From the sequence record ON529851.1: a stretch of DNA of 64,000 nucleotides. One strand, 5' to 3'. The notes beneath the pieces were generated by a model. It did not search any database. It had not been told where the DNA came from and saw only the letters and a list, made by a program, of their open reading frames with translations. Each line of letters starts with the position of its first letter. Position 1 is the first letter of the stretch. Below, piece after piece: positions 22,434 through 33,445 of the stretch. The position numbers were made by a program, and so were the translations under genes.

Positions 22434-23672
22434 GTGAGCACCTTTGCTGTTCCGATCCTCGCGATCGACGACGTCTACGATCACCCCAACGCTGATCGAC
22501 TCTCCATCATCCGTATTCGCGGCTACGAAGCCGTCGCCGGCAAGGCCGAGGACGGCTCGCACCGCTTCGCCAAGGGCGAACGCATCATCTACGTGCCCGA
22601 GGGCGCGGTGGTGCCGGACCAGCACCTGAAGGAGCGCGGCTACTGGAACGAGGCCAAGGGCGTCGGGCTGCTGGCGGGCACAAAGGGCAACCGCGTCAAG
22701 GCCATCACCCTGCGCGGCGTGCTGAGCCAAGGCCTGGTCTGGAAGACCGAACCCCTCACGGGGGCGAAGGTCAAGGATCGCGTGACCGGAGACATCGTGA
22801 CCCAGGTGAACCCTGAGAAACCCGCTCTGGCGATCGCCACGGCTGAAGACGGCACGCAGACGGCGGTGATGGTCGATTTCGGCGACGACGTCGCCGACTT
22901 CTTCGGCATCACCAAGTACGATCCGCCCATCCCGCCGGGCCTGGACGGCGACGTCTTCGGTCTGTTCGAGGCGATGTTCAACTACGACATCGAGAACGCC
23001 AAGGCCTTCCCGAACCTGTTCACCGAGGACGACATCGTCACGGTGACGGAGAAGCTGCACGGCACCTTCTGCCGGATGACCTACATGCCCGGCATCGAAC
23101 CGCGCGAGGACCTGTTCGGCGACGGCCGCGTGGCGATCACCTCCAAGGGCCTGGGCGCCGACGGCCTGGTGTTCAAGAACACCGCCTTCAACCGCCAGAA
23201 GAACGTCTACGTCCGTAACATGCTGCCGCTGGTGGACCACTTCGTCTCGGCCTGCAACCAGGACGCCAAGGGCCTGACGGTCCACCTGATGGGCGAGGTT
23301 TACGGCGCCGGCGTGCAGGACCTGAAGTACGGCCGTACCGAGGATCAGGGCTTCGCCGCCTTCGACGTCTGGATCGAGAAGTCTGGCTTCCTGGCCGAGA
23401 TCGAGAAGGAGTACGCCTGCATCGCCTTCGGGGTGGAGCGGGTGCCGGTGTTGTTCGAGGGCTTCTACGACAAGGGCCTGATCGAGGACTTCGCCAAGGG
23501 CGACACTACGATCGACGGCGCCGAGAACATCCGCGAGGGCGTCGTCGTGACCCTGACCGGCGAGCAGGACAAACGCCCTGACGGCAACGGCCTGGGCGGA
23601 ACCCTGCGCCCGATCTGCAAGGTCGTGTCGGAAGCCTACCTGACCCGCAAGGGCGGGACCGAACTGCAATAG
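22434..23672 (+). CDS. ATP-dependent RNA ligase (DRB0094/Rnl2-like, N-terminal OB-like domain)
   Basis: TEKLHGT (KxHG), GEVYG, FAAFDV, REGVVV, KVVSEAYL; N-terminal HPNADRL. Confidence 0.9.
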   Translation: MSTFAVPILAIDDVYDHPNADRLSIIRIRGYEAVAGKAEDGSHRFAKGERIIYVPEGAVVPDQHLKERGYWNEAKGVGLLAGTKGNRVKAITLRGVLSQGLVWKTEPLTGAKVKDRVTGDIVTQVNPEKPALAIATAEDGTQTAVMVDFGDDVADFFGITKYDPPIPPGLDGDVFGLFEAMFNYDIENAKAFPNLFTEDDIVTVTEKLHGTFCRMTYMPGIEPREDLFGDGRVAITSKGLGADGLVFKNTAFNRQKNVYVRNMLPLVDHFVSACNQDAKGLTVHLMGEVYGAGVQDLKYGRTEDQGFAAFDVWIEKSGFLAEIEKEYACIAFGVERVPVLFEGFYDKGLIEDFAKGDTTIDGAENIREGVVVTLTGEQDKRPDGNGLGGTLRPICKVVSEAYLTRKGGTELQ

Positions 23673-26844: not shown

Positions 26845-26931
26845 TGGAGGTGCGACCTGGACTCGAACCAGGATGAGGGTTTCCCCTACGGCTTATGAGG
26901 CCGCTGCCTATTCCAGCCGCGCCACCGCACC
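26845..26931 (-). tRNA. tRNA with CAU anticodon (Met or Ile2), long variable arm, U73
   Basis: acceptor GGTGCGG/TCGCACC-T-CCA; anticodon arm GCGGC-CTCATAA-GCCGT; V-arm AGGG-GAAA-CCCT; T arm CCTGG-TTCGAGT-CCAGG. Confidence 0.9.
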
Positions 26932-26942
26932 AAAAAGAAGTC

Positions 26943-27021
26943 CAGGCGTGCTCCCGTTACACTAAACCGGCGAGGGTCATGACCCTCGGGCGCCGGCTGC
27001 GGGGTTGAACCGCTCTGCCTG
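26943..27021 (-). ncRNA. circularly permuted tRNA mimic (YrlA-like module)
   Basis: order CAGGC, T arm GCGG-TTCAACC-CCGC, AGCCGGCG, palindromic hairpin GAGGGTCATGACCCTC, CGCCGGTT, TA, D arm GTGT-AACGGGA-GCAC, GCCTG. Confidence 0.75.
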
Positions 27022-27161
27022 TGTTTCCGCCGCTGCGCCATGCGAGCGCTGGCCGCTAAGCCAACGCCTGAGGGCTCGAACCCCGGCGACGAAGATTCGG
27101 ACCAGCCCGTCGGCCGGTCCACGAACGCCGCTGCGCCGAGGGAGGCGCCGAGGCGATCGAA

Positions 27162-27629: not shown

Positions 27630-27971
27630 AAAGTGGGGAACTTTCTGTTCCAAGGCCCGGCAAGCCGGGGTTCCCCATACCCGTGGTCGCCCTTAGGCGG
27701 CCAGGAGGACTCGTTCGCCAGCGGCGAAGTTGTCGTTGTGTGCTTCGACAGTTGTCAAAGTTGGATCGTGAGCAGCCCGAAGACCACCATGCAGACCCTA
27801 GCACTCGCCATTCAATCCCGTCACCAACGTCAATCGATACTGTTCGGCCCCTCAAACCGCGCCCGTCTCCCATTATAGGAGGGGGATTGGTGGAGCCGAC
27901 GGGATTCGCACCCGTGTCTTGCCCGTCTGTTTCGTTCTCTCTGCTTCGGTCCGGAGACCTCCGCGCGACGA
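27630..27971 (-). ncRNA. ssrA: two-piece (circularly permuted) tmRNA, alphaproteobacterial type
   Basis: acceptor piece ends GACACGGGTGCGAATCCCGTCGGCTCCACCA (CCA 27888-27890); 36-nt spacer; coding piece starts GGGGCCG at 27851 (G3:U70, A73); tag frame 27743-27693 AHNDNFAAGERVLLAA*. Confidence 0.93.
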
Positions 27972-28026: not shown

Positions 28027-28113
28027 TGGAGGGACGGGTGAGAATCGAACTCACGCCAGGCTTTCGCCAGGAGGATTTGCAGTCCCCCGCCTTACCACTC
28101 AGTCCACCGTCCC
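28027..28113 (-). tRNA. tRNA-Cys(GCA) with long variable arm
   Basis: GGGACGG/CCGTCCC-T-CCA (U73); GGGGA-CTGCAAA-TCCTC; ~16-nt extra arm CTGGCGAAAGCCTGG; GTGAG-TTCGATT-CTCAC. Confidence 0.9.
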
Positions 28114-29231: not shown

Positions 29232-29238
29232 ATGCAAG

Positions 29239-29270
29239 AGCCCCGACCGAGCGATCGGTCGGGGCTTTTT
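29239..29270. terminator. bidirectional intrinsic terminator
   Basis: AGCCCCGACCGA/TCGGTCGGGGCT stem then TTTT. Confidence 0.9.
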
Positions 29271-29279
29271 CTCGCCGTC

Positions 29280-29455
29280 GTCTGTTTCTCGGCCGGCGCA
29301 GCGTCAGGAGGGTGTGTCGCGAGACCTCCGTCACGGCTCCAGGGCGCTGGGTCCCCTGAAGCAATCCTCACCTGAACCGGGCTTTCCTCCCCAAGGGGCT
29401 GAAGGTGGCGGCGTCCAGGCGACCCTGCGGGGCTCACACGGCAAGGTCGCTTCTT
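29280..29455 (-). ncRNA. candidate ncRNA unit U4
   Basis: non-coding, hairpin-rich; shares CGTGACGG and an ACGCCG loop with U1-U3. Confidence 0.35.
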
Positions 29456-29529
29456 AATGCCAGGCATAGAAGTCGACAGGAGAAAGGGTTTTCCTATTCT
29501 CCAGCATTGGCGTGGTCCGATGTCGATGT

Positions 29530-29730
29530 AGCACAGCCTCTGGCTGCCGTCACGCCTGGTTCCCATTTCTAGGACGGCGTTCTCCTCAGAAGACGGGTCC
29601 GGGTAGACCTCGTGCGGCTCTTCAGCGCCTGACGGAACTCGACGACGTGGTTGCCGGCCGTCTGAACTGGCGTCCCCAAGCGCTCCCAGGGGCATGCCGT
29701 AGGAGTGTGGCAGGGTCCGCCCCACGCTGT
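29530..29730 (-). ncRNA. candidate ncRNA unit U3
   Basis: promoter TTGACT-17-GTATAT; 3' pseudoknot motif GGA-GAACGCCG-TCC...AGGCGTGAC. Confidence 0.6.
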
Positions 29731-29764
29731 GTCAGGATATACGACAATGAAGAGGGGGAAGTCA

Positions 29765-29995
29765 ACACCGCCTCTGGCGGCCGTCACGCCTGGTCGTTCG
29801 TCTCGGGCGGCGTTCCCGTCAGGCCTGATTGTCCCCGGCCGAGGTTTGTTCGGGGGAGCGGTGCGGTCAATCACCCCGACTCACGTTCTCTCGTAACCCG
29901 GCAGTACGGGCTTAAGCGCGCACGAGCGCTGCAAGGCAGTCACGCGGTGGTCCGCCTGTGGTGGGGCTTCAAATCCAGTCGCGCAATCCCCGCCT
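29765..29995 (-). ncRNA. candidate ncRNA unit U2
   Basis: promoter-like TTGACC-17-CATATA; same 3' motif; 27/29 identity with U3 3' end. Confidence 0.6.
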
Positions 29996-30029
29996 ATATG
30001 TCAGGATTGTCGTCAACGGTCAAGATGGT

Positions 30030-30240
30030 AAAGGGCGCTCTCTCCCGGTCACGCCTTGTCCTGATGTCTCAGCCGGCGTTCGCTTCAGACAGTACGGCAT
30101 TCTCGGGGCCGTCCCACTCACCCGCTGTCGTCGGGCCTGTTCCCAGAGGAAGGTCTACCCCAGGACAGATTGCTCCGGAGGCCAGGTCAGGGGCAAACCC
30201 TGTGTGCTGCGCCTAAGGACCTTCAGCAAGCGGAGAGCCT
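30030..30240 (-). ncRNA. candidate ncRNA unit U1
   Basis: begins after rsr terminator; AGC-GAACGCCG-GCT...AGGCGTGAC; CTCTCC/GGAGAG end pairing. Confidence 0.55.
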
Positions 30241-30262
30241 ATCAGGATCAGGGCGAGAGGGC

Positions 30263-30298
30263 AAAGAAAAACGGCCCTGATCTTCAGATCAGGGCCGC
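30263..30298 (-). terminator. terminator of the Y RNA-rsr operon
   Basis: CGGCCCTGATC-TGAA-GATCAGGGCCG then TTTTTCTTT. Confidence 0.9.
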
Positions 30299-30354
30299 AT
30301 CAAACTTACGTTGTAGCGTAATTCCGCACGCGGATTACGAATACCCGTGCCGGA

Positions 30355-31740
30355 TCAGCCGACGACGTTTCCGTCCGAGAAGTCCATCGCTTCGACTTCC
30401 CGGATATAGCGCAGGACGCTCTCCGAGAAGCCGTCGATGTGGACCCACCCGTTGCCGTACCCGACACCATTCTGGTGGCTGGCGACGTTGATCATATAGG
30501 CCTTGTCGGCCTTGGGCGCCGGCAGTCGTCCGCCGCCCATGCCACTGCTCAGGGCGCCGTTCGCCTGTTCGTCAGTGATGACGATCAGTCGGTCGCAGGC
30601 GAACTGGCGGTTCACCACGTCCACGGCCTGGGCCAGGGCGGTGCCGCTGTGCGGCTGCGAACGGATCACCGCCTCGACCCCCGCCATGCCCTTGCGGGCC
30701 GGCACTTCCACGAGGCCGTTGGAGAAGGTCACGACGCGCACGTCGCCCGGCAGGATCGACGCCAGCGTCGCCGCCGCGTCCATCCGGGTCAGGTCCGACT
30801 TTCCGGACAGCTTGTTCCGCATGGAATAGGAGACGTCGACCATGACCACGGTCGATCCCGTGAAGGGTTCGGCCTGGTTGATCGAGGCCACCAGGGCGTC
30901 GTCCAGCGCCCGCTCGAACGAGGGCGCATAGCGCGCCGCCGCCGTGAAGCGGAAGGGCAGGACGCGATCCGCGCCCTTGCGCGCCCGGATCGCGGCGTTG
31001 ACCAGATCGCGATCGACGCCGGCCTGCTCCATGTTGCGCAGGTTGCGCAGCAGGGCGAGGTAGCCCAGCTTGCCGTCGGTCAGCAGACGCGTGAACGTCG
31101 CCTTCTTGTCCGCGCCGCCCGACAGGGCGACTTCCCAGGTGTCGGGCGCCGCCAGTTCGTTGTCGACCAGCTTCTTGTAGAGGGTCTCGCGGTCATCGTT
31201 CGCCGGCTTGGCGTGCGCCAGGAACAGGACGTCGCGCAGACGCACCGACTTGGCCCGATCGTATTTGGCGATCTGGTAGGCGTCGAAGTTGCCGAAGGCC
31301 ATCGACAGGCCCTTCTTCACCTGGGCCGACAACGGCGCCTTCTTGCCGTTCGAGCGCAGCGGGTTCAGCGCCCAGTAGAGGGCCAGGAACTCGCTCAGTT
31401 CGTCAGCGCGCTGAATGACGCGCGCGATGGTGAGCGACACCAGGGCCGAACCTGAGCCGCGCTGGGCCAGCACGACGAGCAGCAGAAGGGGAACGTGACG
31501 CAGCTTGGCGTCCTCGCGGGCCTCGACGGCGATCTGGGCGAGGGTCTCGACCGGAACCTCCTTGGCGAGGCTCTGGATACGGTCGGCGATCGACACGCCG
31601 CTCTCGTAGAAATTGTCTTCCCAGAGCAGGCAGGACATGACCGACCGGCGCAGGGCCTGCGTCTTGGTCATCCGATCGGCCGGCGCGCCTTCATGAGTTC
31701 GCGCGGTGGTCGCTTTGGGCTTTGCGTTGATCGACGCCAT
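30355..31740 (-). CDS. rsr: Ro60/Rsr-like TROVE + vWA RNA-binding protein
   Basis: THEGAPA, LRRSVMSCLLWEDNFYESG, KYDR..VRLRDVLFLAH, TWEVALS, LLRNLRNM, VLPFRF; vWA DVSYSM, GT, ITDEQ; AGGAGG RBS. Confidence 0.93.
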   Translation of the reverse strand: MASINAKPKATTARTHEGAPADRMTKTQALRRSVMSCLLWEDNFYESGVSIADRIQSLAKEVPVETLAQIAVEAREDAKLRHVPLLLLVVLAQRGSGSALVSLTIARVIQRADELSEFLALYWALNPLRSNGKKAPLSAQVKKGLSMAFGNFDAYQIAKYDRAKSVRLRDVLFLAHAKPANDDRETLYKKLVDNELAAPDTWEVALSGGADKKATFTRLLTDGKLGYLALLRNLRNMEQAGVDRDLVNAAIRARKGADRVLPFRFTAAARYAPSFERALDDALVASINQAEPFTGSTVVMVDVSYSMRNKLSGKSDLTRMDAAATLASILPGDVRVVTFSNGLVEVPARKGMAGVEAVIRSQPHSGTALAQAVDVVNRQFACDRLIVITDEQANGALSSGMGGGRLPAPKADKAYMINVASHQNGVGYGNGWVHIDGFSESVLRYIREVEAMDFSDGNVVG

Positions 31741-31782
31741 GATGGGTCCCCTCCTAAGTGTCTGTCGGCAGGATGACCTTGA

Positions 31783-31937
31783 GGTTGGGGAGGAAAAGTC
31801 GAAAACCCTTTCATACCGGTGCGTCTACCGTTTCCGCCACCCGCGCATTGTGGCGCGCGAGCCAGGACTTGAACCTGGAAGCCCTTGACGGGCGCCGGTT
31901 CCAGACGAAGTATGGGCTCTCTGCGCCATCCCCGACC
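31783..31937 (-). ncRNA. Y-RNA-like element D: permuted class II (Leu-like) tRNA mimic with internal GCCA
   Basis: ACCGG, V-arm GCCC-GTCAA-GGGC, T arm CCAGG-TTCAAGT-CCTGG, CTCGCGC-GCCA-CAAT-GCGCGGG, TG, D arm GCG-GAAACGGTAGA-CGC, CCGGT; outer stem GGTCGGGGA/TCCCCAACC. Confidence 0.85.
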
Positions 31938-31957
31938 TCGCGGTCAGTGAACTCTCC

Positions 31958-32095
31958 GGCGCTCTGGTAGGAAGGCGGGGGAACATACGCAGCCGGATAG
32001 CGGGATCGAACCGCGAGACCGGGGGTTTGAATCCCGGCTTATCAACCAGCGATGTAACCGACCGCTTTCACCACCCGCCCACCAACCAGGGCGCC
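31958..32095 (-). ncRNA. Y-RNA-like element C: non-permuted degenerate tRNA-like core (UCA loop) in a long closing stem
   Basis: outer GGCGC-CTGGT/ACCAG-GCGCC and GGCGGG/CCCGCC; GGTGGTGAAAG motif; T arm GCGG-TTCGATC-CCGC; loop ATTCAAA. Confidence 0.7.
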
Positions 32096-32108
32096 GGAAA
32101 AGCAGAAA

Positions 32109-32259
32109 CATGAAGGCGGTGGGGGAATAAGCGACCCCACTCTTTTTTAGGCGTGCTACCGTTACACCAAACGCCGCTAGGCGACGTTGCGGAATCGAAC
32201 CGCTCATCCCGCTCCACATGCGATGAAAGTGACGTCTGTCGCCACCCACCGCCTTCATG
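32109..32259 (-). ncRNA. Y-RNA-like element B: permuted tRNA mimic
   Basis: 15-bp perfect outer stem CATGAAGGCGGTGGG; T arm GCGG-TTCGATT-CCGC; AACGTCGC-CTA-GCGGCGTT; D arm GTGT-AACGGTA-GCAC. Confidence 0.85.
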
Positions 32260-32269
32260 CTGTTGGTCC

Positions 32270-32445
32270 AGAAGCGTATGGTGGATCGACAGGGGAACCG
32301 GCGGAAAGGCGCCGTTTGGACTATCGTTCTAACCAACTGAACTACCGCCGCGCCCGAGGGTGCGCCGGGTGGGACTCGAACCCACGACCTACAGTGTGCG
32401 AAGAATGCCTCTCCTTCACCACCTGTCGACCCGCCATACGCTTCT
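32270..32445 (-). ncRNA. Y-RNA-like element A: permuted tRNA mimic with bulged helix
   Basis: 12-bp outer stem AGAAGCGTATGG; GTCGACAGG/CCTGTCGAT; GGTGG[T]GAAGG/CCTTTCCGCC; ACTGT-AGGTC-T arm GTGGG-TTCGAGT-CCCAC; D arm GTTC-AGTTGGTTA-GAAC; ATAGT. Confidence 0.88.
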
Positions 32446-32464
32446 CGACCCTGTCCGCGACAGT

Positions 32465-32580
32465 CCCGAGGACTGACCCCGCAGAGAACCGGAGTTCCCT
32501 TGCGGGGTCAAGTCGTCCGGGAATAGGCGGAACCGAGAGCGGGGCCAAGGCCCCAACGTACCAAAAACGAAGAACTCGGT
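32465..32580 (-). ncRNA. 5' leader hairpins of the Y RNA array
   Basis: TGACCCCGCA/TGCGGGGTCA 10-bp stem; ACCGAG/CTCGGT enclosing GGGGCC/GGCCCC. Confidence 0.4.
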
Positions 32581-32625
32581 CCCTGTCGCCACGGACAATG
32601 ACTGTGTGCCCGATCCCGTTCATTG

Positions 32626-32643
32626 TGTCAACAACGACGACAG
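32626..32643 (-). promoter_or_regulatory. -35 element with CGT box upstream of Y RNA array
   Basis: CTGTCGTCGTTG-TTGACA; -10 not clear. Confidence 0.5.
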
Positions 32644-32663
32644 AAAAAGTTGGGATTTGCGGC

Positions 32664-32696
32664 AAAAAGAAACCCCCGGATCGCTCCGGGGGTTTC
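32664..32696 (-). terminator. terminator after repressor gene
   Basis: GAAACCCCCGGA/TCCGGGGGTTTC stem then TTTTT. Confidence 0.85.
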
Positions 32697-32728
32697 CACG
32701 ACGTCTGACGTCGGCGGGGGTTCCAGGG

Positions 32729-33445
32729 TCAGACGCCGATCTTGCCCACCACCTTGCCCAGCAGGGTGATGCTCTTGGCGGGGACGTCGCGGTGTCCGCG
32801 ACGGTCCTGATCGAAGATGCGGTAGGGGCCGTTGGCGCTGGGGCGGGTGAGGTGGTCGACGCGGACCTCGCCGTCCAGGGCGTAGACGAAGGTGGCGCCC
32901 GTGGGGGTGGGGGTCGCCTCGCGCTGCACGAAGGCCATCTCGCCCGGTTGCAGGTTCTCGGCGAAATCGTCGATCCGGATCAGGGCGAGGGATTCGGTCG
33001 GCACGTCGAACTGGGTTTGCAGCCAGTCGGCGAACATGGGCCAGGCGCGGGCGGCGGTGAAGCCCTTGCGCGGGCCGGCGAACTCGACTTCTTGCAGGGT
33101 GACGAGGTCTTCGATCCCGTCGGCCAGCCATTGCGGCGCGGTTTGCAGCGCCTCGGCGAGGATGTCAGCCTTCTGGGTGCCGAACGCCAGCCACTCCGGC
33201 GAACATTGCAGGGCCTCGGCCAGGGTGACGATCTTCTCGATGTCCGGCAGAACGTCCCCGGTCTCGTACATGCAGTAGGCGGAGCGGGACAGGACCTTCC
33301 ACTCGGCCTGGCGGCGGTTGTAGAATCTGATCTTGGCCGCAACCTCGGCCTGGGACATGTCCAGTTCCATGCGGCGCGACGTCATGCGCTCCTGCATGGT
33401 GGTGGGGTTATCGATCATTCCCTTGAGCGACCCCTTGCGATGCAT
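32729..33445 (-). CDS. XRE-family HTH / S24-like repressor
   Basis: RRMELDMSQAEVA...YETG..P..EKIVTLAEALQCSPEWLAFG; C-terminal S24-like beta domain; AAAGGA RBS at 33445. Confidence 0.8.
   Translation of the reverse strand: MHRKGSLKGMIDNPTTMQERMTSRRMELDMSQAEVAAKIRFYNRRQAEWKVLSRSAYCMYETGDVLPDIEKIVTLAEALQCSPEWLAFGTQKADILAEALQTAPQWLADGIEDLVTLQEVEFAGPRKGFTAARAWPMFADWLQTQFDVPTESLALIRIDDFAENLQPGEMAFVQREATPTPTGATFVYALDGEVRVDHLTRPSANGPYRIFDQDRRGHRDVPAKSITLLGKVVGKIGV

What the first reader, a model, noticed from the sequence alone, without database searches (positions are those of the whole stretch)
31740..32643. Phage Ro60/Rsr gene preceded by a tandem array of four tRNA-mimic Y-like RNAs
Seen in sequence: four consecutive 138-176 nt elements (A 32270-32445, B 32109-32259, C 31958-32095, D 31783-31937), 10-20 nt apart. 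Each is closed by its own terminal stem (perfect 12 and 15 bp in A and B), and the last ends 43 nt before the rsr ATG. A, B and D show T arm, loop-closed acceptor stem, then D arm: a circularly permuted cloverleaf whose anticodon stem continues into the closing stem. A has a single-bulge helix GGTGG[U]GAAGG/CCUUUCCGCC, and C repeats GGTGGTGAA. Established: bacterial YrlA Y RNAs have this permuted tRNA-like domain plus a bulged Rsr-binding helix and lie beside rsr. Inference: the modules look derived from different tRNA types (Leu-like D; Gln/Gly-like B; AGGUC-type A), giving a panel of Rsr-tethered tRNA decoys or gates, possibly against anticodon nucleases. I know of no description of an array this diverse in a phage.
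Basis: partly seen in the sequence, partly recalled or inferred. Interest (0 to 1): 0.95.

Follow-up and report, generated by a model that had tools for sequence, protein, structure and literature searches.

The report
Five-module Y RNA array before phage Ro60
A giant Brevundimonas phage carries, just upstream of its Ro60/Rsr gene, an unannotated operon of five stem-closed small RNAs (three of them circularly permuted tRNA look-alikes); they belong to the known Y-RNA partners of Ro60, and related phages carry between one and eight of them.

Summary
The window is Brevundimonas phage vB_BpoS-Marchewka. The 990-nt gap between an HTH gene and the TROVE+vWA (Ro60/Rsr) gene has no annotation in GenBank. 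On the rsr strand it folds into five self-closed modules, not four: E, A, B, C and D, plus one plain hairpin.

All five share one frame: outer stem, U-GG-YGNAG, inner helix, UACUUC-like element, body, GCNNRUUCC, outer stem. A covariance model trained only on minimal modules finds A–D independently and hits nothing else in the 64 kb.

A, B and D contain T arm, closed acceptor hairpin and D arm in that order, the YrlA topology. C is a cloverleaf in native order. E has no tRNA part.

Covariation across orthologues is strong. The same frame lies next to rsr in about 70 of the other phage and MAG loci examined, with 1–8 modules per locus.

This is the known Ro60/Y-RNA system; Y-like RNAs were already reported for the relative CcrColossus. 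It is a new, unusually large and mixed member. Rfam's YrlA model misses it. The anticodon-nuclease decoy idea has no support, because A, B and D have no anticodon loop.

The parts
32664..32698 (-). Intrinsic-terminator hairpin with a U run, ending the upstream HTH gene. It marks the 5' limit of the array's transcription unit.
   Evidence: Read directly (GGAAACCCCCGGAGCGAUCCGGGGGUUUCUUUUU). Partial Rfam matches to terminator-containing families.
32626..32631 (-). Conserved TTGACA (-35-like), exactly 28 nt upstream of module E's stem in Marchewka, Domovoi, Gurke and Colossus. Candidate promoter; inferred.
   Evidence: Sequences. The sigma-70 consensus scan found no full promoter, so this rests on conservation and fixed spacing only.
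32509..32600 (-). Module E: a minimal Y-like RNA with no tRNA arms. Outer stem UGUCCG/CGGACG, U-GG-CGACAG, inner 9-bp helix, UUCUUC, apical hairpin, GCCUAUUCC.
   Evidence: R2 62.0 bits (E was in the training set). RNAalifold on 5 orthologues keeps both helices, with 3 compensatory pairs. Same frame in 12 unrelated phage loci.
32451..32508 (-). Plain conserved hairpin at the position where Gurke, CcrPW and Colossus carry a full module (F). It has no Rsr-site motif.
   Evidence: No R1 or R2 hit.
32265..32450 (-). Module A: YrlA-type. About 25-bp outer stem, U-GG-UGAAGG, helix GGAGAGG/CCUUUCC, AC-stem analogue ACUGU/AUAGU, 5-nt variable loop AGGUC, T arm, closed acceptor hairpin, D arm (core 32326-32385), GCCGGUUCC.
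   Evidence: Rfam YrlA 32.6 bits, E = 6e-5, below the gathering score of 69. R1 56.8 bits. R2 31.9 bits, E = 2e-6, not in training. ARAGORN accepts the re-permuted form. 19 of 58 pairs compensatory.
32107..32261 (-). Module B: permuted T arm, 7-bp acceptor hairpin (loop CUA) and D arm GUGUAACGGUAGCAC (core 32151-32204), with a V arm and an A-rich linker. Frame U-GG-CGACAG ... GCUUAUUCC.
   Evidence: R1 39.1 bits. R2 38.6 bits, E = 3e-8. ARAGORN accepts its T, acceptor and D parts only when given a synthetic anticodon arm. 18 of 50 pairs compensatory.
31952..32101 (-). Module C: cloverleaf in native order (D-like hairpin AUCG/UGAU, anticodon-like arm, T arm GCGGUUCGAUCCCGC). Its closing helix continues into the frame U-GG-UGAAAG ... 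GUAUGUUCC. Same orientation as Yrn1.
   Evidence: R2 36.5 bits, E = 1e-7. Only a weak Rfam tRNA-Sec match, 21.9 bits, and no ARAGORN call. 17 of 48 pairs compensatory.
31774..31946 (-). Module D: permuted class-II (Leu-like) tRNA mimic with AC stem ACCGG/CCGGU, long variable arm, T arm, acceptor hairpin and 3-bp D stem GCG..CGC (core 31821-31878). The acceptor loop reads GCCA (31854-31851) plus CAAU, which looks like a tRNA 3' end followed by a spacer.
   Evidence: R1 53.2 bits. R2 29.2 bits, E = 2e-5. ARAGORN accepts the re-permuted form as an 88-nt tRNA. RNAalifold recovers every arm, with 13 of 44 pairs compensatory. NCCA loops are tabulated.
31748..31755 (-). Shine-Dalgarno AGGAGGGG, 7 nt before the rsr ATG.
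   Evidence: Read directly.
30355..31740 (-). rsr: phage Ro60 orthologue, 461 aa (TROVE/HEAT ring plus vWA).
   Evidence: Pfam TROVE 2.6e-12 and VWA_2 2.8e-6. Full-length match to Thermus phage phiLo Ro60, 9KOP/9L5Y, E = 1.6e-19. Annotated as 'RNA-binding protein' in ON529851.
30271..30298 (-). Intrinsic terminator after rsr; 3' limit of the unit.

Best explanation
The HTH-rsr gap encodes a polycistronic array of five Y RNAs that partner the phage's own Ro60 (Rsr) protein.

Shown by sequence analysis:
- Each module is closed by its own stem.
- Each carries the same two-strand frame, U-bulge + GG/CC + internal loop YGNA/GCNNRUU, then an inner helix followed by a UACUUC-like element.
- The frame lies next to rsr in 33 of 38 independent phage loci that were found without any reference to rsr.
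- Three modules carry a circularly permuted tRNA domain (YrlA topology). One carries a cloverleaf in native order. One is minimal.

Inferred from position: the array and rsr form one transcription unit, from a conserved TTGACA upstream of E to the terminator after rsr. The precursor is probably cut in the 3-6-nt spacers or in the long outer stems. D, whose acceptor loop reads GCCA+CAAU, may additionally be cut by RNase P.

Inferred from established Ro60 biology (D. radiodurans, S. Typhimurium, Thermus phage phiLo): each module binds one Rsr ring through the conserved frame. Its distal domain acts as an effector or tethering module, most likely linking Rsr to the host 3'-5' exonuclease PNPase for handling structured RNA during infection. 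The tRNA-like heads would stabilise the RNA and dock tRNA-binding factors.

The purpose of having several different heads is not known.
For: Identity and context:
- The window is 100% identical to ON529851.
- The adjacent gene is TROVE+vWA and aligns over its full length to phiLo Ro60.

Structure:
- Array z-score is -10.7.
- Each module's own flanks pair; flanks from different modules do not.
- Pairs with compensatory changes: A 19/58, B 18/50, C 17/48, D 13/44, E 3/21.

Permuted tRNA core:
- In 15 paralogues and orthologues, 11 of 12 T/acceptor pairs covary. 90.6% of cells are paired against 60.9% in shuffles, and the covariation score is 0.75 against 0.06-0.18 for slid partners.
- ARAGORN accepts the re-permuted constructs.

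Shared frame:
- Model R2 was built from minimal modules only. 14 of its 17 pairs covary, with a score of 0.75 against 0.21.
- R2 finds A, B, C and D at E = 2e-5 to 3e-8 and nothing else in the 64 kb.
- All 120 R2 hits in 413 kb of related loci lie on the rsr strand and upstream of rsr.

Link to rsr, tested without assuming it:
- A motif scan of IMG/VR returned 80 loci. 38 of them are R2-positive. 33 of those 38 have a TROVE gene in the locus. In 31 it lies 76-1422 nt downstream on the same strand, and in 2 the module lies about 190 nt downstream of rsr.

Published precedent:
- YrlA RNAs lie beside rsr in 254 bacteria and 22 phages (PMC4201824).
- The YrlA crystal structure is a tRNA mimic without a CCA end or an anticodon loop (bioRxiv 10.1101/312249).
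- phiLo Ro60 binds upstream Y-like RNAs and host PNPase in vitro (PMC12135203).
Against: - There are no expression, end-mapping or binding data for this phage or any close relative.
- Rfam's YrlA model scores A at only 32.6 bits against a gathering score of 69, and misses B-E.
- The published Rsr motif GNCGAAN0-1G is matched only approximately.
- The canonical YrlA D and T stems are close to the consensus in A but not in B or D.
- The promoter is only a conserved -35-like hexamer; no full sigma-70 match was found.
- R2 does not match the region upstream of phiLo Ro60 where the experimentally bound Yrl1 and Yrl2 were taken from. No module here is therefore tied by sequence to a biochemically validated Ro60 ligand.
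- 5 of the 38 R2-positive loci have no detectable TROVE gene nearby.
Confidence: 0.8

Rival explanations
1. One reading: the modules are Rsr-tethered decoys or gates. They mimic particular tRNAs and soak up host anticodon nucleases or other tRNA-targeting defence toxins.
For: - The heads are of different tRNA types: class I with an AGGUC variable loop in A, and class II, Leu-like, in D.
- The phage invests in tRNA biology, with 24 tRNAs (PMC10070969), a tmRNA and an RNA ligase 7 kb away.
- In many other loci rsr sits inside large tRNA gene arrays.
Against: - A, B and D have no anticodon loop, which is the element that known anticodon nucleases recognise. The stem continues into the Rsr-site helix.
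- C's loop is not conserved among orthologues.
- Most acceptor ends are closed by a loop, so enzymes that need a free CCA end are not mimicked either.
- No known defence or anti-defence gene was seen next to the array.
Confidence: 0.08
2. The array is mainly a cis-acting 5' leader of the rsr mRNA. Rsr binds the repeated sites on its own transcript and so autoregulates its translation or stability. Under this reading the modules are not released as separate RNAs.
For: - All modules lie between the only promoter-like element and the rsr start codon, with no terminator in between.
- D ends 33 nt before the ATG.
- In nearly all related loci the last module ends 76-480 nt before rsr.
Against: - The tRNA-like domains, and their covariation, are not needed for a simple autoregulatory operator.
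- In two IMG/VR loci and in phiLo the modules lie downstream of rsr.
- In bacteria, Y RNAs encoded beside rsr accumulate as free RNAs (PMC4201824).
Confidence: 0.1
3. The elements are decaying or split tRNA genes, relics of tandem tRNA dimers, with no function tied to Rsr.
For: - ARAGORN and the GenBank pipelines call parts of the orthologous modules tRNAs: tRNA-Ser in Gurke and Kikimora, tRNA-Gln in Colossus.
- The 5' motif U-G-G-C-G-U-A-G looks like tRNA positions 8-15.
- NCCA plus a spacer occurs in about 10 of 58 acceptor loops.
- A dimeric-tRNA origin has been proposed for YrlA (Sim and Wolin 2018, as cited in 10.1101/312249).
Against: - Origin and present function are separate questions.
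- The non-tRNA frame is conserved and covaries in unrelated phages, and it is tied to rsr in position and strand.
- No module is called a tRNA in its native order in this window.
Confidence: 0.02

Closest known systems
YrlA Y RNAs (Rfam RF02553; Chen et al. 2014, PMC4201824; crystal structure 6CU1, bioRxiv 10.1101/312249)
   Same: They are encoded beside rsr on the same strand. The 5' and 3' ends pair into a stem that carries the Ro60 site. The distal domain is a tRNA mimic ordered V/variable, T arm, closed acceptor stem-loop, D arm, with the anticodon stem replaced by the connecting helix. A UA follows the inner helix. Some have a CCA-like acceptor loop, and M. smegmatis YrlA is cut by RNase P.
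   Different: All modules score below Rfam's gathering score (A 32.6 bits against 69). The Ro-site motif is UGGYGNAG placed after the outer GG-rich stem, not GNCGAAN0-1G before it. The D and T stems, nearly invariant in YrlA, differ in B and D, and D is class II. Five to eight modules of mixed architecture sit in one operon, whereas Chen et al. report 355 putative YrlAs in 276 genomes, about 1.3 per genome.
Thermus phage phiLo Ro60 with Yrl1/Yrl2 (PMC12135203; PDB 9KOP, 9L5Y)
   Same: Its protein is the closest solved relative of this Rsr (E = 1.6e-19, full length). It is a phage-encoded Ro60 with Y-like RNAs in the flanking non-coding DNA. Binding to host PNPase has been shown in vitro, which is the model for the mechanism proposed here.
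   Different: The published Yrl1 and Yrl2 are upstream hairpins chosen by a CGAA motif, with no tRNA-like domain, and R2 does not match them. R2 instead finds a module just downstream of the phiLo gene.
D. radiodurans Yrn1 and the four small RNAs upstream of rsr (Chen et al. 2000, 2013, as cited in PMC4201824)
   Same: Several small RNAs are encoded in tandem upstream of rsr. In Yrn1 the T and D arms are in native order relative to the Ro-binding stem, as in module C. Yrn1 tethers Rsr to PNPase.
   Different: No sequence relation was tested. Yrn1 keeps both strands of the metazoan-like Ro helix. Only one of the four Deinococcus RNAs is counted as a clear Y RNA.
Orthologous arrays in CcrColossus/CcrPW (8 modules), Gurke/Kikimora (6) and Xanthomonas phage MET23-P3 (5)
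   Same: Same frame, same position between a DNA-binding or other upstream gene and rsr, and the same module types. Modules A, B, C, D2 and E are orthologous to those of the Caulobacter and Brevundimonas phages.
   Different: Module content differs. Marchewka lacks F (only a hairpin remains), D1 and D3. Gurke ends with D1 rather than D2. Acceptor hairpins have been replaced wholesale even between phages that are 91% identical.

Membership tests
YrlA (Rfam RF02553 / Chen et al. 2014) | Encoded within 4 kb of a Ro60/Rsr (TROVE) gene, on the same strand | tested here: met
   The modules lie 33-860 nt upstream of the TROVE+vWA gene on the minus strand.
YrlA (Rfam RF02553 / Chen et al. 2014) | Domain ordered T arm, closed acceptor stem-loop, D arm (permuted tRNA), joined to the Ro stem through an anticodon-stem analogue | tested here: met
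   Met for A, B and D: R1 gives 56.8, 39.1 and 53.2 bits, covariation is seen in 11 of 12 pairs, and ARAGORN accepts the re-permuted constructs. Not met for C (native order) or E (no tRNA part).
YrlA (Rfam RF02553 / Chen et al. 2014) | Motif GNCGAAN0-1G in the 5' strand (proposed Rsr site) | tested here: inconclusive
   There is no exact match. The variants are GGUGAAGG (A), GGUGAAAG (C), GGCGACAG (B, E) and GGCGCAG (D). They sit in a different position relative to the G-rich stem than in the Rfam consensus (alignment).
YrlA (Rfam RF02553 / Chen et al. 2014) | Nearly invariant D-stem and T-stem sequences (UAGCUCA..GGUAGAGC; GCGGGUUCGA.UCCCGC) | tested here: not met
   A is close (UAGUUCAGUUGGUUAGAAC; GUGGGUUCGAGUCCCAC). 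B has UGGUGUAACGGUAGCAC and D has UGGCGGAAACGGUAGACGC.
YrlA (Rfam RF02553 / Chen et al. 2014) | Score at or above Rfam's gathering threshold (69 bits) | tested here: not met
   A scores 32.6 bits; B-E have no YrlA hit. The same holds for 20 related loci and for Colossus, where the best scores are 42.3, 30.5 and 29.9 bits.
Y RNA (functional class: Ro60-bound ncRNA) | 5' and 3' ends pair into a stem that holds a conserved bulged or internal-loop Ro site, with a variable distal module | tested here: met
   The R2 frame is present in all five modules. 14 of 17 frame pairs covary across 13 unrelated minimal modules.
Y RNA (functional class: Ro60-bound ncRNA) | Physical association with Ro60/Rsr; accumulation as a discrete small RNA | not testable with these tools
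   No transcriptome or binding data are available for these phages.
Canonical tRNA | Cloverleaf in native order with free acceptor ends and a 7-nt anticodon loop, recognised by tRNA finders | tested here: not met
   ARAGORN and Rfam tRNA find nothing in 31740-32643. C reaches only 21.9 bits on tRNA-Sec.
phiLo-type Yrl RNAs (PMC12135203) | Sequence or structure relation to the Yrl1/Yrl2 RNAs shown to bind phage Ro60 | tested here: not met
   With filters off, R2 finds nothing in the 460 nt upstream of phiLo Ro60. It hits downstream instead, at L186 3988-4061 (29.8 bits).

The most novel reading that the evidence does not exclude
The array is a panel rather than redundancy. Each module presents Ro60 with a different tRNA-class head: class I, class II with an encoded CCA junction, a native-order cloverleaf, or none. 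After RNase P cuts at the NCCA+spacer loops, some modules would become two-piece tRNA mimics with a free CCA end. The panel would couple phage Ro60/PNPase, and possibly the nearby RNA ligase, to surveillance, repair or selective decay of particular tRNA classes while the phage runs translation on its own 24 tRNAs. That would give the tRNA-like domain of bacterial Y RNAs, whose function has been unknown since 2014, a concrete and testable role.
Probability: 0.12. Interest if true: 0.8.

Novelty: new member of a known kind. Interest (0 to 1): 0.45.

Why it matters
Bacterial and phage Y RNAs are known, but the job of their tRNA-like domain is not. In most genomes there are only one or two copies to work with. 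These cultured phages offer five to eight distinct modules in one operon, each with a clear orthologue series. The phages are Marchewka and its relatives on B. pondensis LVF1, CcrColossus on C. crescentus, and 43-kb Xanthomonas phages.

That makes a natural experiment in which individual heads have been gained, lost and swapped while the Ro-site frame stays fixed.

The frame defined here is captured by a model that hit only the rsr strand upstream of rsr in 413 kb of rsr loci, and mostly directly upstream of rsr elsewhere. It finds Y RNAs that Rfam's YrlA model misses. It also exposes tRNA mis-annotations in GenBank and predicts which nucleotides a phage Ro60 should contact.

This extends a known system. 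It is not a new one.

Tried and rejected
- **Rfam at gathering thresholds.** It found no YrlA in the window or in 20 related loci. Only the E-value mode showed A.
- **A hand-written rule** (TGGYG + CC + 7-nt flank pairing). It found the five modules but had a high background: 16 other hits in the window, against 7.2 (maximum 15) in Markov nulls. I replaced it with model R2.
- **Single-sequence MFE folds.** They mis-pair D's T arm with its variable region and join E to the following hairpin. The alignment-based folds were used instead.
- **Assigning a tRNA identity to each head.** I aligned each head to 130 ARAGORN tRNAs from the fetched loci. The result was only weak tendencies: D to Leu, B to Gly, A to none.
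- **Tying the frame to experimentally bound RNAs.** I fetched phiLo, but R2 does not match the published upstream region.
- **Literature gaps.** Supplementary Tables S1/S2 of Chen et al. 2014, which list how many YrlAs were reported for CcrColossus, and the 2020 Annual Review are not held. I therefore cannot say exactly how much of the Colossus array was already described.
- **Alternative pairing of GGCG with a 3' CGCC/CGCU.** This fits many large modules but not the minimal ones, so I did not adopt it.
- **Protein coding.** No gene caller annotated the gap in seven phage records, except a 42-aa ORF on the opposite strand in CcrPW. The substitutions preserve RNA pairing.


Full report
**What the window is.** Positions 30300-32700 are 100% identical to Brevundimonas phage vB_BpoS-Marchewka (ON529851, 348 kb, Dolichocephalovirinae). 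The gene at 30355-31740 (-) is annotated 'RNA-binding protein'. It has TROVE and vWA domains and aligns over its full length to the Ro60 of Thermus phage phiLo (PDB 9KOP/9L5Y, E = 1.6e-19). It is therefore a phage Ro60/Rsr. The 990 nt between it and the upstream HTH gene (32729-33445) carry no annotation in GenBank.

**Checking the observation.** On the minus strand the gap folds into self-contained domains. The array's MFE lies 10.7 sd below shuffles. With extended stems they are A 32450-32265, B 32261-32107, C 32101-31952 and D 31946-31774.

I add a fifth module, E (32600-32509), and a plain hairpin (32508-32451). Each module's 5' flank pairs with its own 3' flank (7-10 of 10 positions) and not with those of the other modules (mean 5.8).

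**The shared frame.** Every module, here and in the orthologous gaps of Domovoi, Gurke, CcrPW and CcrColossus, starts with outer stem, U, GG, YG(N)NAG. Eight to eleven nucleotides later comes (A/U)(C/U)UUC. Every module ends with G-C-N-N-R-U-U-CC and the outer stem.

The same frame defines short 'minimal' modules upstream of rsr in a dozen unrelated IMG/VR phages. The consensus is: stem, UGGYGNAG, 9-bp helix, UACUUC, loop, helix, GCUUGUUCC, stem.

On an alignment of 13 such minimal modules, 14 of 17 pairs show compensatory change. 86.9% of cells are paired against 59.5% in shuffles. The covariation score is 0.75, against 0.12-0.21 when partners are slid.

The model built from them (R2) contains E but none of A-D. 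It still finds B, C, A and D as full-length matches (38.6, 36.5, 31.9 and 29.2 bits; E = 3e-8 to 2e-5) and nothing else on either strand of the 64-kb window. Across 413 kb of related loci, all 120 of its hits lie on the rsr strand and upstream of rsr.

**The tRNA-like parts.**
- A, B and D contain a T arm, then a closed 7-bp 'acceptor' hairpin, then a D arm.
- On 15 such cores from five phages, 11 of 12 T/acceptor pairs covary. 90.6% of cells are paired against 60.9% in shuffles.
- Model R1, built from those cores, scores A 56.8, D 53.2 and B 39.1 bits.
- I cut A and D in the acceptor loop and bridged their native anticodon-stem analogues with a synthetic 7-nt loop. ARAGORN then calls both tRNAs, D as an 88-nt class-II tRNA. 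B passes only with a fully synthetic anticodon arm.
- The orthologue alignment of D recovers AC stem, variable arm, T arm, acceptor hairpin, D arm, a second helix and the frame.
- A is the only module Rfam's YrlA model sees, at 32.6 bits and E = 6e-5, well below the gathering score of 69.
- C is a cloverleaf in native order whose closing helix runs into the frame. Its loop sequence is not conserved among orthologues.
- E has no tRNA part.

**Transcription unit (inferred).** A terminator hairpin ends the HTH gene (32698-32664). A TTGACA lies exactly 28 nt before E's stem in four diverged lineages. There is no terminator within the array. A strong Shine-Dalgarno precedes rsr, and a terminator follows it (30298-30271). 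The sigma-70 scan found no complete promoter, so the promoter call rests on conservation alone.

**Relatives.**
- The orthologous gaps hold 5 modules in the Marchewka group, 6 in Gurke/Kikimora and 8 in CcrPW/CcrColossus.
- Modules have been gained and lost. Marchewka's last module is type D2 and Gurke's is type D1.
- Acceptor hairpins have been replaced outright even between phages that are 91% identical.
- Beyond this group, R1 finds at least one permuted core directly upstream of rsr in nearly all 55 independent viral and MAG loci.
- R2 counts 1-4 modules in most loci, 5 in the 43-kb Xanthomonas phage MET23-P3, and 8 in IMG/VR contig 3300014489_000001.
- As a test that does not presuppose rsr, I scanned all IMG/VR contigs for the bare motif. 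Of the 80 loci returned, 38 are R2-positive. 33 of those carry a TROVE gene in the locus. In 31 it lies 76-1422 nt downstream on the same strand. The other 42 matches are R2-negative and look like chance hits.

**What is already known.**
- Chen et al. 2014 (PMC4201824) described YrlA RNAs with exactly this permuted tRNA domain beside rsr in 254 bacteria and 22 phages. They noted that M. smegmatis YrlA is cut by RNase P and receives CCA.
- The crystal structure (bioRxiv 10.1101/312249) shows a tRNA mimic lacking a CCA end and an anticodon loop. That paper also cites a dimeric-tRNA origin model.
- PMC12135203 (2025) solved phiLo Ro60 and showed that it binds two upstream Y-like RNAs and host PNPase. 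It credits Chen et al. with Y-like RNAs in CcrColossus.
- The paper describing the Brevundimonas phages does not mention Ro60 or Y RNAs.
- The kind is therefore known. What this locus adds is an unannotated, unusually large and mixed array, and a frame consensus that Rfam's model does not capture. On Colossus the Rfam model scores only three of the eight modules, all below threshold.

**How it most likely works.** Shown: the modular anatomy, its conservation, and its tie to rsr. Inferred from Ro60 biology: each module binds one Rsr ring through the frame, and the distal domain acts as effector or tether, most plausibly to host PNPase. The tRNA fold would add stability and a docking surface for tRNA-binding factors.

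D's acceptor loop reads GCCA+CAAU. NCCA plus a spacer occurs in about 10 of 58 cores, roughly ten times the chance rate of about 1.6%. This suggests RNase P processing in a subset of modules. Domovoi's D lacks it, so it is not essential.

The 17-25-bp outer stems of A-D would insulate each module's fold. They could also be RNase III sites, which is speculative.

**The decoy idea.** Known anticodon nucleases recognise the anticodon loop. A, B and D have none, and C's is not conserved. I found nothing that supports this reading. It stays possible only for factors that recognise the tRNA elbow or body.

**Verdict.** Assigning these RNAs to the Ro60/Y-RNA (YrlA-like) system is well supported. The specific functional story is not. 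Novelty: a new member of a known kind, and among the largest arrays seen in this sample.

Noticed in passing
window 27693-27950 (-): A two-piece (permuted) tmRNA of the alphaproteobacterial type, 57.2 bits against Rfam tmRNA_permuted (gathering score 47). It is not annotated in ON529851, and the phage paper states that no tmRNA could be detected (PMC10070969).
   Followed up: partly
window 26932-27161 (-): The 230-nt spacer between the two tRNA-Met genes holds two more units ordered T arm, acceptor hairpin, D arm (R1: 26946-27014 at 26.3 bits; 27023-27085 at 14.9 bits). Each is preceded by UGGCGCAG. Neither has the R2 frame. The spacer is conserved in the Marchewka group (88-99%) and unannotated. 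MFE z is only -2.4.
   Followed up: partly
L003 2959-3033 (Gurke), L005 2942-3016 (Kikimora), L007 4609-4676 (CcrColossus): The GenBank features 'tRNA-Ser' (Gurke, Kikimora) and 'tRNA-Gln' (Colossus) lie inside Y modules D1 and B. They are most likely miscalls, because the outer stem plus UGGCGYAG imitates an acceptor stem plus D arm. ARAGORN makes a similar 'tRNA-Pro' call on a module in another fetched locus.
   Followed up: partly
L048, L049, L056, L058, L025, L011, L037: In these MAG and IMG/VR loci, rsr and its 1-4 Y modules sit in the middle of dense tRNA gene arrays, with 6-23 tRNAs per 6-7-kb locus by ARAGORN (L011 by Rfam tRNA hits). In this window rsr likewise lies 2.2-3.5 kb from tRNA-Cys, the tmRNA and two tRNA-Met genes.
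   Followed up: partly
L186 3988-4061 and 4179-4266 (Thermus phage phiLo, MH673673): R2 finds a Y-frame module immediately downstream of phiLo Ro60 (29.8 bits, with UACUUC and UUUCC) and a weak second one (7.9 bits). Both overlap the annotated hypothetical CDS phiLo_25. R2 finds nothing in the upstream region from which the published Yrl1 and Yrl2 were taken.
   Followed up: partly
L187 1351-1954 (Xanthomonas phage MET23-P3, OK913680): This 43-kb phage carries five R2 modules, two with strong permuted tRNA cores, in the unannotated 700 nt before its rsr. Its close relatives include Usme, Tenjo and Tabio. Large arrays are therefore not confined to jumbo phages.
   Followed up: partly
window 26845-26931 (-) and 28027-28113 (-): One tRNA-Met (26845-26931) and the tRNA-Cys are each 87 nt long, with a 12-13-nt insertion that forms a long variable arm (alignments). 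That is unusual for these isotypes in bacteria.
   Followed up: no
window 29232-30354: This 1.1-kb stretch downstream of rsr has no annotated gene, no Pfam hit on its two longest plus-strand ORFs, and no Rfam, R1 or R2 match. Its content is unexplained.
   Followed up: partly
window 22434-23672 (+): An RNA ligase (Pfam RNA_ligase PF09414 plus the PHA02142 OB domain) lies 7 kb from rsr. In bacteria rsr is often linked to RtcB or other RNA ligases.
   Followed up: no
L080, L144, L076, L112/L133 (IMG/VR): These loci have strong R2 modules (42-58 bits) with no detectable TROVE gene in the 1.2-3 kb downstream. They may be orphan Y-like RNAs, or rsr may lie elsewhere in those genomes.
   Followed up: partly
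L188 (crAss001, MH675552) and L189 (Ralstonia phage RsoM2USA): Both phages encode Rsr homologues (36% and 44% identity), but neither has an R2 hit or a full R1 hit near the gene. crAss001 has a 900-nt unannotated gap downstream of the gene with only T-arm-like matches. Their Y RNAs, if they have any, follow a different pattern.
   Followed up: no
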